Assembly (NCBI GenBank): GCA_001179505.1
Contig: CDMY01000270.1
Location: forward strand, 1 to 64,000
Reading direction: 5' to 3'
Source: Vitrella brassicaformis CCMP3155
Taxonomy: Eukaryota; Protista; Chromerida
Length of the DNA stretch: 64,000 nucleotides
Both the position numbers and the translations under genes were made by a program. Numbering within the stretch: position 1 is the first letter of the stretch; every line of letters begins with the position of its first letter. This document shows, in pieces, positions 24,499-30,496 of this stretch. The notes beneath the pieces are model-generated. The model saw nothing but the letters and a program-made list of their open reading frames with translations. It did not search any database and was not told where the DNA came from.

Positions 24499-25868
24499 GA
24501 GAGCAGAGAGACACCGATGATCAAGTGGCGTGGATGGTCAGTGTGTCAGATCTGCATTCATGGTAGTCTTGTTTGTACAGTGGGCGGCCGGTGGGAGGGA
24601 GGGAGGGAGGCTTGGGGCGATGAGATAGATGAGATGAGTGTGTGGAGCAGGGCAGGGCAGGGCGTGTGTGTGTGTACGCATGTGTGTGCTGGCTGGATGG
24701 ATGAGTGAGTGCGATCGATAGATATCAATGGCGCCTTTTTGGTCAATCAAATGGTCTGTCTGTCTGTAATATAGATATACAACTACTAGACAAAGATGAT
24801 CGATGGACTTCATGACCGACCTGCCCGTCGTTAGGCGTGTGATGGATCATTTACTAATTCAAACGTCAGTCACCATGTTCCATTCCATAAACAGACATAC
24901 ACACACACACACACACACATGCACACACGTGCACTGCACGGCCACACACATGACGCAGCAAGAGGTACAAATGTTGATATATGATTAGATATGGGCACCA
25001 CATCACATACATGTATCACACACACATGTAGACAGGCGGGACATGCATACGAAACGAATCCACCCTCCCCTCCCCCTTGTCCACTACCAACATACAAATT
25101 AGCCTTTTCTTGTAGAGAGCGAGTAGAGAGAGAGTGAGTAGACAAACAGTGTTCGGATCGGATCTGCATATACATGTAGACAGACAGTGACCTGTGTAGG
25201 TTAGGTTGCACAAAAGCAGCTTTGGCTTAGATACACCCTTAACCCCCGTGCATCGCATCACAGCCTTACCTGAGCACAGAAAGAGGGAGACACTCACACA
25301 TACAGACATACATACATCCATAGAGAAATACACACATACGCGGCAGTCCCATGCATGGTATGCAGCACAGCACGTACTGATCGACAACACCACCAAAAAA
25401 GACTTCTCACTAGCTCACTAGACAAATACGGAACAGACACGCACCAATACACACATACACATGGAGCCAGCAGACAATTAGCGAAAAATGCCTGGCACAC
25501 AAATACATACAGAGTGCAGATAGATATAGACAGACTGACTATTGAAGCAATCATATCATCAATCAAAAGGATGGCAGGCAATTGCATTGCACACACACCG
25601 ACGAGCAAAAGCCACACAAATCACACAAATCACACAAATCCATTGATTCCATCCATCCATCCACAGGAAGTGAAGCGACATACATTCACACATACACTTC
25701 CATCCATCTACTCAATCAAGCACCGCCCCTCACACACATACAATACAGGCATAGCATACACGCTTACGCATCCACATACAGACGACACGACCTGCATCCC
25801 CCCCCGGGCCCTCAGAAAAGACCTACCCTACCCACCGCCCTGCACCCCACCTCTCTCTCCCTCTTTCA

Positions 25869-28788
25869 TTATTTCTCCCTCTCACTCTTCCGCTCTCCCG
25901 TGCTGCGGTGCTTCTTGCCCCTCGTGAGCGCCCGCACCACCGCCTTGAGCCCCTCACTGTTCAGTCCAGCAGGCGTCATCGGGTGCACTTCACCGCCGCC
26001 ATCTCCATCTCCATGCCCCTGCCTATCCCTCTCCCCAGGCACACCATCGACAGGGGCAGCTTGCTCGTCGTCAGGGTTGGGGCTAGGCTTGGGGGGATCC
26101 ACCTTGATGGGCGTGGGGTCGTGTTGCTCCACCTGCTCTTCTTCCTCCGTGCTCGGCTGCTCCAGTCTGCCCGGGTTGGTCTTGGAGCGATACTGCTGCC
26201 TCGTGTATGGCGACACGGGGAGGTCGGTGGAGGGAGAGGTGGCCGCACCGTTGGCCTGCGGGCGGCTCCTCTCAGGCGGCCGTGATTTGGACCTCGATGC
26301 CAGCCACACTGCCAGCGGGTTTGGGGTGGACACCGGCGTGGACGACATGGACCAGGGCCGCCAGGCTCGCGACGAACCGGTGGGCGGTGCGGCCTTGGTC
26401 GCCTCTGGTGTGTGTGCGTCCTCCTGTTCCTTGACGACCGCGACGCTTCTCCTGTGCGTGTCCATGCTGATGATGGCCGGAACGGGGCTGGCGTCGCCTG
26501 TCTCCCCGCTGGACGGAGTTGTCGTCATGAGCGACATCGACGGGCCGAGGGATGTCTGCGTCCGGTCACCGGCGCTCGGGGGCGCTTCGGGCTCCTCCTC
26601 TGTCGCCCTTCCTGTCTCGTCAGCACTACCAGTGGACCGGTGGGATGGAGGGACGCCGGCCTCCTCAGGGGCAGGAGGGGGATGGGCACATCGCGGCGGC
26701 CTCTTGCTGGTCGCCACCCTCCTCCCCTCGCCGTGGTTGTCGGTGTGCCGGGTCCTGCCTGGGCCTGGTTGCCTGCCGATGGGCGAGATGAGGGCCTTCA
26801 TGGGCGAGGTGCCGTGTTTGTTGCGGAGATGGTGGGGCACCGGCCCCCAGCAGAGGAAGGGGCCGCCCTCCTTCCACACATAGTAGGACCGCAGCAGCCA
26901 CAGCAGAAGCAGCAGGAACAGGGCCGCCCCGATGGCACCCACCAGCACGGGAAGCACGACGTGGTGCGTCTTGGAATTCTCGCGGAACACAGCTGCGAGC
27001 GACACGGCACAGAGACAAAGTGAGCCGGCTCAGCCAGCCGACGGGAATGTGGCTGGCACGTGTTGGTTGGCACCGCACCTGGGAGTTTGTCATTGGGCAG
27101 CGGCCAGCCACAAGCGATCTTTCTGGAGGCCATGATGGGTCGTCTGTCCCGAGTGTGGGTGATGCCGATGCCGTGGTGGGTCGTCCTGTTGTACTCGTCG
27201 TCAGCCAACTGGTGCGTGCTCCACCCCTTGAGCGAGCATGTCGTCGTGCGCATGTCATAGACCACTCCCCCACACCGCCCGTCGCCCGTGCACCACTGCT
27301 GGCACTCCTTGAATGTCTCGGCGCTCTCAGACCACAGGGCGCCGCCGCGCGACAGAGACGAGTGATCCTTCTCGTCGGCGAAACACCAGTGCACTGCACA
27401 TAAACAGAGAGACCGACAGGCGGGGATTTTTCTGTTTGTTTCTGCACGGGTTTCCCTTTGTCTGTCGGCTCTTCTCCTCTCACCGCAATATCTTGGCCCG
27501 GCTGTGCTGTTGTGGTGCTGCTGCGTCTTGTCGGCTTGTATGTGCGAGAACACCCGACAGGTGTGTGGCTCTGTGAACGAGAAGTGCCTGCATCGTGGGT
27601 GCGCCTGGCAGGTCCGCTGGCAGTCCTTTGCCGACGATATGGGGAAGGACGGGTAGCCCAGGTCGCCCAGCACGGGATTCCTTATCGGCACCGTCAGCTC
27701 GCCGCCAGCCGATGGCTGGTACCGCGTCGCCTTCTCATAGCAAAAGTCTCTGCCTGAAAAACACAGATAAGCGCTCCCCCAGTGAGAGAATAACCACCAT
27801 CGCGCAGCGTCATTCTGACCATAAGGGTCCGGTAGTGTGGTCATATCCGAGTGCCTCAGGGCGATCGTCAGCCGTCCGCCCTCCTGCCGGACGGTGCTCT
27901 TGCTGAAGTCGCTCCGGCTCAGTAGGAAGGAGGATTCCACCAGCACCCAGTCGCCCCCCTTCCAGGCCTCAAGCACCTTGCCGTCCTTGGAGAAATGCTC
28001 CTCATACGCGGGGGTGAAGGCTCTCGTCTGCAGGTCGTAGTCCCACACGCGCACCCAGTCAAACTCCGCCCTGGCCGGGAGGGCACATGATTTGTCGTCG
28101 AATGCGCCGCCCCAGTCCTCGATATAGGGGTGCACCACCCACACCGACTGGTGCAGCTCCATCGGCCGGGAGGGGACGCTCACGTCGTCGTCGCCGTCTG
28201 ATACATACCTGATTTCAGTGCCGTCGACGAGCCACCTGACGTACTCTGGCGTCCACTCAATGGCGAAGGTGTGGAGCCTCTCGGCGAAGGACATGCCATC
28301 GGGGCTGTGGTGTAGCTGCTGTGAGAGTGTGCGGTTGCCGTCGACCCCTCCGATAATATTGGTCTGGAGCGTGGCTGCGTCGTCCTTGCCGAACACCTCC
28401 ACGTCGATCTCCTGCCACCCGTTGCTGTCATCCTCGCTCTTGGGGTTGTACAGAAAGAACGACACCTGACAGACAAGCAGAAGGGACAGGGATACGCACA
28501 CACATGCCGTACGTCTGTCTGCCTGTCTGTCTGTCTTTGAGTGTCCGCTCTTGTAGGTCTTACGAGCACGCCGCTGCAGTTGATGGCCTGAAGGCGCGAC
28601 TCGAACCGGCCGTAGAGGTAGACGTCCTTGGAGATGGCCCCTCCGCCCTGCAGCAGCTTCTGGCAGCTCCCCCACCGGGCGTCGAAGGCCAGCCCGCCGT
28701 CCTCGCCATCAGAGGGGCACTGGGACACGACGACCGTCACAAACAAGAAGGAGAGCCAACTAGAGGAACAAGGAAGCAGCCGGCGCAT
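25869..28788 (-). CDS. Type I membrane protein: signal peptide - GH16 beta-glucanase (circularly permuted type) - 2x PAN/apple - TM - long low-complexity cytoplasmic tail
   Basis: Exons 28788-28564, 28465-27820, 27753-27484, 27393-27079 and 26992-25869. GH16 motifs YLYGRFESRL, SG.LVSFFLY, WQEIDVE (catalytic ExDxE at 28397-28411) and HTFAIEWTPEYVRWLVDG. PAN motifs SAKDCQRTCQAHPRCRHFSF..C and ECQQWCTGDGRCGGVVY..CSLK. TM segment VVLPVLVGAIGAALFLLLLLWLL. Confidence 0.88.
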
Positions 28789-28861
28789 AATCCAGTGGGG
28801 TGTGTGTGTTGTACGATTATTTCATCCTCGACCTTTCATTCATCGCGAGTAGAGGAAAAGA

Positions 28862-30496
28862 ATGGGGAATGACGTGACGGTGCCCAGCAGCCGGCAGGCC
28901 CTGCCGCCGGCCAGGGAGAACGAGGCCATCGATTTCATCCACAGCCTGGGGCGGGATGCCATCCACACACTCGAGGGCATCGGCATACTCAGATGCACGG
29001 CCGCCTTCCTATCGCAGATAGACTTCTCGGCCGCCGTCCTCCGCAATCGGCTGGGGCGCTGCCTGGCGGCCAAACACCTCGACGGCATCATCGCATTCGA
29101 TTTGCAGCTGGGGACCAAGCTCGTGTTGAAGGCCATCTGGCTGGTGGACACGTAGCAGTGGACCGAGGTAGCCAATGCGCTGAAGGTGGCGGCGCAGCGC
29201 GGCTTCTGTCAGCTGCCCATCACACTGGCTGTGGCCGACCTGCAGCGTCACGATAGCAAACAGGTGGGCAGATGAGCGTGGGGCGGGGGGGGGGGCACTC
29301 ATCGGTTTGTCTGTCTGTCTGTCTGTGTAGGCGTATTTGGCCGATGTGCGTGTGATTGCGTTGTGGAAGATGGTCGGCAGACACGTCAACTTCGGCGGCA
29401 GCTACGGCCGTTTTGAGCTGTTTGACCAGCCGGGCGGCGGTGTGCGTGCCATCAAGGACGAGTCGGGCTTCGAGCTGGACATCAACCCGCCCCTCCCCCC
29501 CNNNNNNNNNNNNNNNNNNNNNNNNNNNNNNNNNNNNNNNNNNNNNNNNNNNNNNNNNNNNNNNNNNNNNNNNNNNNNNNNNNNNNNNNNNNNNNNNNNN
29601 NNNNNNNNNNNNNNNNNNNNNNNNNNNNNNNNNNNNNNNNNNNNNNNNNNNNNNNNNNNNNNNNNNNNNNNNNNNNNNNNNNNNNNNNNNNNNNNNNNNN
29701 NNNNNNNNNNNNNNNNNNNNNNNNNNNNNNNNNNNNNNNNNNNNNNNNNNNNNNNNNNNNNNNNNNNNNNNNNNNNNNNNNNNNNNNNNNNNNNNNNNNN
29801 NCCCCTCCCCCCCGCCCACCCATACCACACACACCATCAACGACAACCCGCCCGTCAGATCCACAATCGGCCTGCCGGGGGGCAGCTGGACGGTCGGTGG
29901 TGCGGCGCTCACTCAGGCCTCGACGTCGTCCTTCATCATGAGGACCATCCTGCGGGCCGGGCATTGGGGCGCCACTCCATTGGTTCGAGTGAACCGGTAT
30001 GCAGGACACACCACACACCACACTCATCAGACACACATCCATCCATCCATGACGGCCTCTTCCCTCTGTTCTCTTCAGGCATGCCCACGGCGGTGTGCTG
30101 GACGGCCTCCTCAACCAGTCGCCCCACCAGCCGCCCCACCGATGCACCGCCGTCATGGCGGGCAGGTTGGACGATAAGGTTCCCCCTGTAGAGACTCGGA
30201 TTCTGCTGCTGACGCCGTTCGACAGCCCATTCGTCGCATCGATCGTTCTCCTCACACGTGCCAACATTAACACAGGTGAGGCGTCACAGATACTCTGGTG
30301 ATGGAGCCGTCCTTTGACGTGTGCTGATTCGGTGGCTGCAGTGGGTGTGTATGCCCTCACCAACGAGCCACCAGTAGGTGGTGCATCGGCTGCCTTCAAG
30401 GACCGCCGGCCCGCCACCGCCCCGCTGGTGGGCCGCCCGCTGGGCAGCACCATCGCAGACATGGTGGTCAACCAGAAAGAGGCAACTAGGCAATAA
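28862..30496 (+). pseudogene. Decayed copy of a lineage-specific multicopy 'MGN...' gene family
   Basis: Homologous to the copies at 61898 and 63378 (DFSAAVL.NRL.RCLAAK.L..IIAFD.QL..LLKAIWLVDT.QWTEVANAL..RGFCQLPITLAVAD.QRHDSKQ). Has an in-frame TAG at 29153-29155 where the others have CAG, an apparent frameshift near 29830 and a further stop at 30299-30301. Interrupted by a gap. Confidence 0.75.

What the first reader, a model, noticed from the sequence alone, without database searches (positions are those of the whole stretch)
25869..28788. Circularly permuted bacterial-type GH16 glucanase fused to PAN/apple adhesion domains and a membrane anchor
Seen: signal peptide, GH16 with intact ExDxE (WQEIDVE), two Cys-patterned PAN/apple domains, one TM helix and a ~340-aa tail. 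The strands that normally open a GH16 jelly-roll come after the catalytic core (AFTPAYEEHF..WKGGDW..SDFSKSTVRQEGGRLTIAL). Known: this permuted order, and motifs such as YGKFEARM, W.EVDIEVLGK, FQSNII, HTYGLEWTPNYVRWTVDG and WGKGDW, characterise the Fibrobacter succinogenes 1,3-1,4-beta-glucanase. PAN/apple domains are typical of apicomplexan microneme adhesins. Inference: a horizontally acquired glucanase grafted onto a microneme-like surface-adhesin scaffold, a bind-and-cut surface enzyme for beta-glucan walls (own cyst/sporangium wall, prey or host).
Basis: partly seen in the sequence, partly recalled or inferred. Interest (0 to 1): 0.8.

Follow-up and report, generated by a model that had tools for sequence, protein, structure and literature searches.

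The report
Membrane-anchored bacterial-type glucanase with PAN domains
An expressed nuclear gene of the alga Vitrella brassicaformis, a photosynthetic relative of malaria parasites, joins a bacterial-style, circularly permuted beta-glucan-cutting enzyme to two PAN/apple binding domains and a membrane anchor; it belongs to a family of at least eleven such genes that probably remodel a beta-glucan cell wall.

Summary
Window 28788-25869 (minus strand) is a five-exon gene. It encodes exactly the public, uncharacterised Vitrella brassicaformis CCMP3155 protein CEL98418.1 (859 aa).

- **Single transcript:** one spliced contig carries all exons, so GH16, PAN, membrane anchor and tail sit on one mRNA.
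- **Permutation:** the GH16 domain keeps the catalytic motif E-I-D-V-E. By sequence and by predicted fold it is colinear with the naturally permuted Fibrobacter succinogenes lichenase, not with unpermuted lichenases.
- **Other parts:** two six-cysteine PAN/apple domains, one membrane helix and a 340-aa disordered tail follow.
- **Origin:** all eight Vitrella GH16s in the tree form one clade (98/83), and the PAN-bearing ones form a subclade. The clade sits inside permuted GH16s from many bacterial phyla. This favours one old transfer followed by duplication; the donor is unresolved.
- **Not unique:** four other Vitrella paralogues carry GH16 plus PAN. One AT-rich prokaryotic or giant-virus contig has GH16, a PAN-like domain and GH10. 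Spirotrich ciliate nanochromosomes carry the permuted GH16 alone.
- **Untested:** the "microneme-like" idea and the substrate.
- **Seen before:** this scan already reported paralogues elsewhere in this genome.

Verdict: a real, moderately interesting new variant of a known enzyme type.

The parts
28564..28788 (-). Exon 1 (aa 1-75): signal-like peptide (aa 1-22, window 28723-28788), a Cys-containing N-terminal stretch, and the first GH16 strands including Y-L-Y-G-R-F-E-S-R.
   Evidence: tblastn 100% identity to P0001 residues 1-76; hydropathy.
28466..28563 (-). Intron 1 (98 nt, GT..AG). AC-rich 5' half and GT-rich 3' half; folds as an end-to-end hairpin.
   Evidence: Spliced contig joint; fold z-score -2.9.
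27820..28465 (-). Exon 2 (aa 76-291): GH16 catalytic core with E-I-D-V-E (window 28397-28417), then the displaced strands (aa 224-279, window 27854-28021) that open the fold in unpermuted GH16s.
27754..27819 (-). Intron 2 (66 nt, in frame, no stop).
   Evidence: Removed in P0001 and in the spliced contig.
27484..27753 (-). Exon 3: PAN/apple domain 1 (aa 292-380, six Cys).
27394..27483 (-). Intron 3 (90 nt, in frame, no stop). Folds as a hairpin that brings its ends together.
   Evidence: fold z-score -2.2.
27079..27393 (-). Exon 4: PAN/apple domain 2 (aa 381-476, six Cys) and a short stalk.
26993..27078 (-). Intron 4 (86 nt, GT..AG).
25869..26992 (-). Exon 5: stalk, membrane helix (aa 497-519, window 26892-26960), a juxtamembrane R-S-Y-Y-V-W-K stretch, a 340-aa low-complexity tail, and the TAA stop (25869-25871).

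Best explanation
This is an expressed nuclear gene of Vitrella brassicaformis (CEL98418.1, UniProt A0A0G4ELW9) for a type I single-pass membrane protein.

**Shown**
- A signal-like peptide is followed by a circularly permuted GH16 beta-jelly-roll with the catalytic motif E-x-D-x-E intact.
- Two six-cysteine PAN/apple domains, one membrane helix and a 340-aa disordered tail follow.
- All parts sit on one spliced mRNA.
- The GH16 is the bacterial, Fibrobacter-lichenase type. All Vitrella copies sampled form one clade inside bacterial diversity, and the PAN-bearing copies form a subclade.

**Inferred**
- An ancestor of Vitrella took up one bacterial permuted GH16 gene long ago. The gene then gained introns and duplicated to at least eleven copies.
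- In one branch it was fused to PAN modules, and in some copies also to C-type lectin modules.
- The ectodomain faces the cell surface or the lumen of a secretory compartment.
- The PAN domains hold a glycan or protein ligand while the GH16 cleaves, or transfers, a beta-glucan chain. The likely substrate is mixed-linkage beta-1,3-1,4-glucan or a related polymer.
- The most likely target is the alga's own thick coccoid or sporangium wall, during growth or release of daughter cells.
For: **Identity and expression**
- P0001 is encoded exactly in the window.
- One 3791-nt contig of run X4 lacks all four introns. The joints read CT..AC on the plus strand, which is GT..AG on the gene strand.

**Domains**
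- Pfam finds GH16 and PAN above the curated cut-offs.
- The nearest ESM Atlas clusters for aa 292-476 are all PAN/apple families.

**Permutation**
- phmmer puts the Fibrobacter enzyme first and colinear through its C-terminal strands.
- The AlphaFold model has pLDDT 82 and pTM 0.82.
- Foldseek puts the natural permutant first (1MVE, 3AXD, 1ZM1; target TM-score 0.85-0.89 over about 250 columns). Engineered permuted Bacillus enzymes come next (0.88 over 239 columns). Unpermuted lichenases align over only 165-180 columns at 0.64.
- 151 of 188 GH16 cores among the best hits show the same order.

**Bacterial affinity**
- At least 409 relatives were found among bacterial species genomes. 76 of 78 fetched loci are permuted. 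They span Pseudomonadota, Myxococcota, Bacteroidota, Fibrobacterota, Ignavibacteriota, Verrucomicrobiota, Spirochaetota and others.
- All the nearest ESM Atlas fold clusters listed are bacterial.
- In a 70-hit word search, the only hits labelled as eukaryotic were Vitrella.

**Tree**
- Careful maximum-likelihood tree: Vitrella clade 98/83, PAN subclade 98/82, enclosing bacterial clade 90/97.

**Catalytic competence**
- E94, D96 and E98 are kept. So are the aromatic residues that align with Fibrobacter F40, Y42, W54, W141, W148, W198 and W203.
- Paralogues P0016 and P0027 have lost the second Glu. Retention here is therefore not automatic.
Against: - No activity, substrate or location was measured. 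The polysaccharides of the Vitrella wall are not described in the papers I could search.
- The positions aligned with Fibrobacter R137 and N139 are His and Ser here. Most Vitrella paralogues also have Ser at the second position. Lichenase specificity cannot be assumed.
- The donor lineage is a polytomy.
- Ciliate sequences group with Vitrella in the best tree, though weakly (32/67).
- Joint transfer of GH16 and PAN is not rejected (AU p = 0.38).
- The PAN fold model was poor (pLDDT 46).
- The signal peptide and the topology rest on hydropathy alone.
Confidence: 0.6

Rival explanations
1. The enzyme is mainly a transglycosylase that cross-links or re-joins wall glucans at the membrane-wall interface, as plant XTH and fungal Crh enzymes do, rather than a hydrolase.
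For: - It has the bulge-free E-x-D-x-E motif. That motif class contains the licheninases, and EG16 links these to the XTH enzymes.
- EG16, XTH-type xyloglucanase and Crh5 structures are among the significant PDB matches.
- Membrane anchoring next to a wall suits remodelling.
- Substrate-contact positions differ from those of the lichenase.
Against: - Its closest characterised relative is a hydrolase (Fibrobacter lichenase).
- No acceptor-site features were tested.
Confidence: 0.2
2. The GH16 module works here as a non-catalytic glycan-binding module, so the protein is an adhesin or receptor rather than an enzyme.
For: - Paralogues P0016 (E-I-D-F-A) and P0027 (E-I-D-I-T) have lost the acid/base Glu. 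P0016 and the catalytically intact P0019 also carry C-type lectin domains. The family therefore does drift towards binding roles.
- Inactive GH16 proteins are known, for example Rv0315 (title listed).
Against: This gene and its closest paralogue both keep E-x-D-x-E and the aromatic platform, while their overall identity is 67%.
Confidence: 0.1
3. Origin rival: the permuted GH16 was already present in an early alveolate, or was acquired once before ciliates and myzozoans split, and was later lost in most lineages. It was not acquired by the chromerid lineage alone.
For: - Two different 1.3-kb contigs capped by C4A4/G4T4 telomeres encode permuted GH16s: L004 and L083-L085.
- In the best tree these sequences and Vitrella lie on one side of a branch.
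Against: - That branch has support of only 32/67.
- Both groups have long stems, so attraction between them is possible.
- No hit labelled as from another eukaryote (apicomplexan, dinoflagellate, Chromera or any other) appeared, but the prefilter of that search is insensitive.
Confidence: 0.25
4. Origin rival: GH16 and PAN arrived together as one cassette from a prokaryote or giant virus, instead of PAN being added inside Vitrella.
For: - P0090 (768 aa) has a permuted GH16, then a PAN-like unit at almost the same spacing (about 60 residues, against 56 here), then GH10. hhalign against the Vitrella PAN profile gives E 5e-5.
- Its contig has 26% GC, tightly packed genes and a type IA topoisomerase.
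- A clade of Vitrella plus P0090/P0154 is not rejected (AU p = 0.38).
Against: - Pfam finds no PAN in the three Vitrella GH16s outside the PAN-bearing subclade, which suggests PAN was gained later within the family.
- The PAN match in P0090 is below Pfam's cut-off (19.5 against 21.4 bits).
- In the free tree P0090 is not sister to Vitrella.
- The best PAN-only hit of the big search is a Neospora multi-PAN protein.
Confidence: 0.15
5. Artefact: bacterial contamination, a chimeric assembly, or two neighbouring genes wrongly merged.
For: None was found. The only weak point is that the record does not state what kind of library run X4 is.
Against: - Four GT..AG introns, all removed in one 3791-nt contig that spans the signal peptide through the 3' UTR.
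- The public record's contig is 141 kb.
- The closest paralogue, which has the same architecture, has transcriptome-derived records.
Confidence: 0.01

Closest known systems
Fibrobacter succinogenes 1,3-1,4-beta-D-glucanase (natural circularly permuted GH16; PDB 1MVE, 1ZM1, 3AXD)
   Same: - Same strand order, with the core first and the usually N-terminal strands last.
- Same E-x-D-x-E catalytic motif and the same aromatic substrate platform.
- Best sequence match (E 1.3e-19) and best fold match (target TM-score 0.85-0.89).
   Different: - Only about 29-30% identity.
- The positions aligned with R137, N139 and E85 are His, Ser and Gln here, and there are several loop insertions.
- This protein is eukaryotic and intron-bearing, and it is fused to PAN domains, a membrane helix and a long tail.
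- The bacterial relatives instead carry type IX secretion sorting tails, malectin-like or CBM modules.
Vitrella brassicaformis GH16 paralogues (CEM17572, CEM00455, CEM38970, CEM00815, CEM01690, CEM31690, CEM35486, CEM11536, CEM14773, CEM26580)
   Same: - All are the permuted type, and the eight in the tree form one clade.
- CEM17572 (P0002) has the same GH16, PAN, PAN, membrane-helix layout at 67% identity.
- CEM00455, CEM38970 and CEM00815 also carry PAN domains.
   Different: - Other members add C-type lectin domains or have no PAN that Pfam detects.
- Two have lost the acid/base Glu.
- The long cytoplasmic tail of this gene is not shared.
Apicomplexan PAN/apple surface and microneme proteins (Sarcocystis SML-2, PDB 2YIL; Neospora NCLIV_038320)
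   Same: - Six-cysteine PAN units in tandem on a secreted or membrane protein of a related lineage.
- These are the best PAN-only matches in the PDB search (E 0.0013) and in the 1.84-billion-protein search.
   Different: - Those proteins carry no glycoside hydrolase.
- Microneme targeting, shedding and host binding were not tested here.
- From my own knowledge: the tail lacks the short acidic, Trp-ended form of gliding adhesins.
Wall-associated GH16 remodelling enzymes (plant XTH/EG16, fungal Crh)
   Same: - GH16 enzymes of the bulge-free motif class that work on the cell's own wall. Fungal Crh is tethered to the membrane by a GPI anchor (my own knowledge).
- They are significant structural matches.
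   Different: - They are not permuted.
- Their substrates and accessory modules differ.
- The Vitrella enzyme is closer to bacterial lichenases.
Oomycete PAN/apple wall proteins such as CBEL (CBM1 plus PAN)
   Same: PAN/apple modules combined with a carbohydrate-directed module in a protist wall protein (paper listed, PMC3532174; role recalled from my own knowledge).
   Different: They have no catalytic domain and belong to a different lineage. This comparison was not tested here.

Membership tests
Glycoside hydrolase family 16 | Match to the family profile above the curated threshold | tested here: met
   PF00722 scores 93.8 bits against a cut-off of 22 on P0001, and 68.3 bits on exon 2 alone.
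Glycoside hydrolase family 16 | Beta-jelly-roll fold | tested here: met
   The AlphaFold model has pLDDT 82 and pTM 0.82. At least 498 PDB matches have E below 0.001, and all 50 listed are GH16 structures.
Glycoside hydrolase family 16 | Catalytic E-x-D-x-(x)-E motif | tested here: met
   E94-I-D96-V-E98 aligns with the catalytic strand of 1ZM1. It is the bulge-free form described in PMC6827312.
Fibrobacter-type circularly permuted GH16 | Strands that are N-terminal in Bacillus-type enzymes lie after the catalytic core | tested here: met
   - The alignment is colinear to the end of 1ZM1.
- The segment HMM hits aa 224-279, after the core at aa 52-218.
- Foldseek aligns about 250 columns with permuted enzymes, against 165-180 with unpermuted ones.
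Licheninase (EC 3.2.1.73; CAZy GH16_21) | Substrate-binding residues of the characterised enzyme are conserved | tested here: inconclusive
   - F40, Y42, W54, Q70, N72, W141, W148, W198 and W203 are conserved, and W186 is Tyr.
- R137 is His, N139 is Ser and E85 is Gln (alignment).
- The roles of these residues are recalled from my own knowledge, plus the PDB titles.
Licheninase (EC 3.2.1.73; CAZy GH16_21) | Strict cleavage of beta-1,4 bonds next to beta-1,3 bonds in mixed-linkage glucan; CAZy subfamily assignment | not testable with these tools
   This needs an enzyme assay and the CAZy/dbCAN subfamily models, which were not available.
PAN/apple domain | Profile match above threshold | tested here: met
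   PAN_1 scores 50.6 bits against a cut-off of 21.4, in two stretches. PAN_4 scores 32.9 against 27. All ten named nearest ESM Atlas clusters are PAN families.
PAN/apple domain | Six-cysteine pattern | tested here: met
   Unit 1 has Cys 295, 335, 339, 345, 356 and 380. Unit 2 has Cys 384, 411, 415, 421, 433 and 475. The pairing 1-6, 2-5, 3-4 is assumed from the family.
PAN/apple domain | Helix-on-sheet fold | tested here: inconclusive
   The AlphaFold model of aa 288-480 has pLDDT 46. It shows one helix over the C-x3-C stretch and flanking strands in each unit, but it is too poor to search with.
Apicomplexan microneme adhesin | Type I membrane topology with an adhesive ectodomain | tested here: met
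   One signal-like stretch and one membrane helix by hydropathy. This feature is generic and not diagnostic.
Apicomplexan microneme adhesin | Short acidic tail with a Trp near the C-terminus, and sorting motifs | tested here: not met
   - The tail is 340 aa with near-neutral charge (45 K+R, 42 D+E). It ends in a basic stretch without Trp.
- The only tyrosine motif is a juxtamembrane Y-Y-V-W, which the paralogue keeps as Y-C-I-W.
- The defining features are from my own knowledge.
Apicomplexan microneme adhesin | Localisation to micronemes and regulated release | not testable with these tools
   This needs microscopy.

The most novel reading that the evidence does not exclude
PAN-bearing, membrane-anchored glycan-cutting enzymes of free-living chromerids could be the kind of protein from which the purely adhesive PAN/apple surface proteins of apicomplexan parasites arose. 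The family shows the steps side by side.
- Active enzyme plus PAN: this gene.
- Enzyme-dead GH16 plus PAN, one of them with a C-type lectin domain: P0016 and P0027.

The GH16-PAN cassette itself may move between alveolates and a giant virus or bacterium (P0090). Both this gene and its paralogue keep a run of small residues in the outer half of the membrane helix (L-V-G-A-I/V-G). That run would also allow rhomboid-type shedding.
Probability: 0.1. Interest if true: 0.7.

Novelty: new variant of a known kind. Interest (0 to 1): 0.45.

Why it matters
Naturally permuted GH16 lichenases are a textbook case of circular permutation, known so far from bacteria. This case shows three further things.
- The permuted form is established in eukaryotic nuclear genomes: Vitrella, and also spirotrich ciliates.
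- In Vitrella it has expanded into a family and has been combined with PAN and C-type lectin modules and a membrane anchor.
- Some copies have lost catalysis.

This gives a concrete set of candidate genes for building, remodelling or opening the thick walls of chromerid coccoids and sporangia, whose chemistry is essentially unknown. It is also a worked example of a bacterial enzyme being absorbed into the extracellular-domain toolkit shared with apicomplexan parasites. It does not by itself bear on parasite invasion.

Tried and rejected
- **Joining exons:** Exons were searched by reference. For whole-protein work I used the public protein P0001, which tblastn and the spliced contig show to be the exact product.
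- **First word search:** the search with the GH16+PAN1 region found only P0001, P0002 and one weak hit, and missed the paralogues found later. That tool's blanks are therefore not evidence of absence.
- **First locus scan:** The search for related loci with alignment A1 failed because no stretch was conserved enough. It worked with the tighter alignment A4.
- **PAN model:** the AlphaFold model was too poor (pLDDT 46), so I ran no fold search on it.
- **P0087 tail:** the Cys-rich C-terminus of P0087 looked PAN-like by eye, but hhalign did not support it (E 0.1).
- **First tree:** the quick tree on the core alone left the Vitrella sequences in a polytomy. Adding the displaced segment and running a careful search resolved them as one clade.
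- **RNA evidence:** runs X5, X6 and X7 added nothing (unspliced pieces, partial low cover, nothing laid).
- **Papers:** searches for Vitrella plus GH16, GH16 plus PAN domain, the chromerid genome paper with its supplements, and residue-level Fibrobacter papers found no earlier description of this protein. They also found no open text on residue roles.
- **Contamination and gene merging:** rejected, as set out under the artefact rival.
Full report
**What is there**

The minus strand of window 25869-28788 holds a gene with canonical GT..AG introns. My reading of the splice sites gave four exons. The public protein P0001 removes one more 66-nt in-frame intron between the GH16 and the first PAN domain. 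P0001 is 859 aa, accession CEL98418.1, UniProt A0A0G4ELW9, named only "unnamed protein product" or "GH16 domain-containing protein".

The final exons are 28788-28564, 28465-27820, 27753-27484, 27393-27079 and 26992-25869. tblastn shows that P0001 is encoded exactly here. The window is therefore Vitrella brassicaformis CCMP3155, a photosynthetic chromerid related to apicomplexans.

Exons were searched by reference, and whole-protein work used the stored protein P0001.

**One transcript**

Laying public runs on 25600-29000 showed one 3791-nt contig of run X4 with all four introns removed. The joints are 26992/27079, 27393/27484, 27752/27819 and 28463/28562. They read CT..AC on the plus strand, which is GT..AG on the gene strand.

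The contig continues through the whole coding region and both untranslated regions. It also rules out contamination.

**Domains**

- Pfam gives Glyco_hydro_16 (1.1e-26), PAN_1 (1.8e-13, two stretches) and PAN_4.
- The two PAN units (aa 292-380 and 381-476) each have six cysteines.
- Every named nearest ESM Atlas cluster for this part, by features or by shape, is a PAN/apple family. These clusters come from animals, oomycetes, fungi and bacteria.
- My own AlphaFold model of the PAN pair was poor (pLDDT 46), so I did not use it.
- Hydropathy shows a signal-like stretch at aa 4-22 and a single strong membrane helix at aa 497-519. The 340-aa tail that follows is rich in Pro, Ser, Gly, Arg, Thr and Glu and has near-neutral charge.
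- The closest paralogue has an unrelated tail. It keeps only the juxtamembrane Y-x-x-W-K stretch and the run of small residues in the outer half of the helix.

**The permutation**

Three independent checks agree.

1. phmmer against PDB sequences puts the Fibrobacter succinogenes 1,3-1,4-beta-glucanase first (E 1.3e-19). The alignment is colinear and runs to the end of that enzyme. Unpermuted Bacillus lichenases align only with the first 140 residues of exon 2.
2. An AlphaFold model of aa 22-295 (pLDDT 82, pTM 0.82) was searched with Foldseek.
   - It best matches the "natural circularly-permutated jellyroll" 1MVE and its variants (target TM-score 0.85-0.89, about 250 columns).
   - Engineered permuted Bacillus enzymes come next (0.88, 239 columns).
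   - Unpermuted lichenases reach only 0.64 over 165-180 columns.
3. A small HMM of the displaced strands hits after the core in this protein and before the core in unpermuted relatives.

The catalytic E94, D96 and E98 are intact. So are the aromatic residues aligned with F40, Y42, W54, W141, W148, W198 and W203 of the Fibrobacter enzyme. The positions aligned with R137, N139 and E85 are His, Ser and Gln. Most Vitrella paralogues share the Ser. The motif is the bulge-free E-x-D-x-E form that separates the licheninase/XTH side of GH16 from laminarinases (PMC6827312). The substrate is therefore probably a beta-glucan, but strict lichenase specificity is not established.

**Relatives and origin**

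A profile of the ectodomain was searched against 1.84 billion representative proteins. It found 2267 hits, 20 of them below 1e-30. Naming the informative ones and a further word search show a Vitrella family of at least eleven GH16 genes. All of them checked are of the permuted type.

| Paralogue | Architecture or state |
|---|---|
| P0002 (CEM17572) | Same GH16, PAN, PAN, membrane-helix layout |
| P0016 (CEM00455) | GH16, three PAN stretches and a C-type lectin domain; acid/base Glu lost |
| P0019 (CEM38970) | GH16, PAN domains and C-type lectin domains |
| P0027 (CEM00815) | GH16 plus PAN; acid/base Glu lost |

Outside Vitrella the permuted type is widespread in bacteria.
- At least 409 relatives were found among species-representative genomes.
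- 76 of the 78 fetched loci are permuted.
- They come from Cellvibrionaceae, Sorangium and Polyangiaceae, Bacteroidota, Fibrobacterota, Ignavibacteriota, Verrucomicrobiota, Spirochaetota and others, at 28-42% identity.
- All the nearest ESM Atlas fold clusters listed are bacterial.

The careful maximum-likelihood tree used 81 rows and 226 columns (core plus displaced segment). It was rooted on unpermuted GH16s.
- The eight Vitrella sequences form one clade (98/83).
- The five PAN-bearing ones form a subclade (98/82).
- Both lie inside a 59-row clade of bacterial permuted enzymes (90/97).
- Relationships within that clade are a polytomy, so no donor can be named.

The simplest reading is one old bacterium-to-eukaryote transfer, then intron gain, duplication and domain accretion.

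**Two complications**

First, two different gene-sized contigs encode permuted GH16s with signal peptides. They are L004 and L083-L085, each about 1.3 kb. The second was recovered from three independent data sets. Both are capped at both ends by C4A4/G4T4 telomere repeats. These are nanochromosomes of spirotrich ciliates, which are also alveolates. In the best tree they sit with Vitrella, but with support of only 32/67. A shared alveolate origin is therefore neither shown nor excluded.

Second, P0090 (768 aa) has a permuted GH16, then a PAN-like unit at nearly the same spacing as here, then a GH10 xylanase domain.
- For the PAN-like unit, Pfam gives 19.5 bits, just below the cut-off. hhalign against the Vitrella PAN profile gives E 5e-5.
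- Its 8.4-kb contig has 26% GC, tightly packed genes and a type IA topoisomerase.
- The octamer AAAATTGA occurs in both orientations in the divergent intergenic region. From my own knowledge this is the early-promoter motif of mimivirus-like giant viruses.
- The host is therefore an AT-rich bacterium or a giant virus.
- A clade of Vitrella plus P0090/P0154 is not rejected (AU p = 0.38).

The anatomy, the permutation and the bacterial affinity are right. The "microneme-like scaffold" is not supported by any test.
- PAN domains are not specific to apicomplexans.
- The tail has none of the features I know for gliding adhesins.
- The chromerid genome paper lists PAN-APPLE among chromerid extracellular domains. 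It says nothing about GH16, glucans or gene transfer (PMC4501334).
- No paper in the searchable library joins Vitrella with GH16, or describes a GH16 fused to a PAN domain.

**Mechanism proposed**

The protein is a type I membrane protein. Its ectodomain cuts or re-joins a beta-glucan while the PAN pair holds a neighbouring ligand. The most likely target is the alga's own thick wall during growth or release of daughter cells. The anatomy is shown; the substrate, the location and the role are inferred.

**Earlier notes of this scan**

Notes s1-197183 and s1-248738 describe paralogous permuted GH16-PAN genes elsewhere in this genome. The first includes a frame-broken copy and "about eight further paralogues". 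My independent count of at least eleven agrees with them.

**Verdict**

This is a real and correctly observed feature. It is a new architectural variant and a new eukaryotic home for a known enzyme type. It is already present, uncharacterised, in public databases, and it is of moderate interest.

Noticed in passing
L004:1-1331; L083:1-1405, L084, L085: Gene-sized contigs of about 1.3 kb, capped at both ends by C4A4/G4T4 telomere repeats, each carry one gene for a secreted, permuted-type GH16 (P0117, P0133). The P0117 reading frame (L004) ends in TGA. These are spirotrich ciliate nanochromosomes, so a second eukaryotic lineage has the Fibrobacter-type enzyme.
   Followed up: partly
L001:5001-7307 (P0090) and L001:1406-1540: A 768-aa protein has a permuted GH16, a PAN-like unit and GH10. 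Its contig has 26% GC, tightly packed genes and a type IA topoisomerase. AAAATTGA occurs on both strands in the divergent intergenic region. The host may be an AT-rich bacterium or a mimivirus-like giant virus.
   Followed up: partly
P0018 (Cellulosispirillum / Chitinispirillales, 440 aa): The layout is core, displaced segment, core, and the two GH16 cores are nearly identical. This is the tandem-duplication intermediate expected on the way to a circular permutation, and it occurs in the phylum Fibrobacterota.
   Followed up: partly
window 28466-28563 and 27394-27483 (minus strand): Introns 1 and 3 have AC-rich 5' halves and GT-rich 3' halves. They fold into hairpins that bring the splice sites together (z-scores -2.9 and -2.2). 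Introns 2 and 4 do not stand out. This matches note s1-221842 on the same window.
   Followed up: partly
P0016 (CEM00455.1) and P0027 (CEM00815.1), elsewhere in the genome: These GH16-PAN paralogues have Ala or Thr in place of the acid/base Glu (E-I-D-F-A and E-I-D-I-T). P0016 also carries a C-type lectin domain. They are probably enzyme-dead binding proteins.
   Followed up: partly
window about 29480-29830: Reading frames on both strands show long runs of X here. This is an assembly gap (run of N) about 700 nt upstream of the gene's start codon.
   Followed up: no
window 26892-26960 and 26871-26891 (minus strand): Between this gene and its closest paralogue the membrane helix keeps a run of small residues (L-V-G-A-I/V-G) in its outer half. 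The juxtamembrane Y-x-x-W-K stretch is also kept, while the rest of the tail is unrelated. These may be shedding or sorting signals. Not tested.
   Followed up: no
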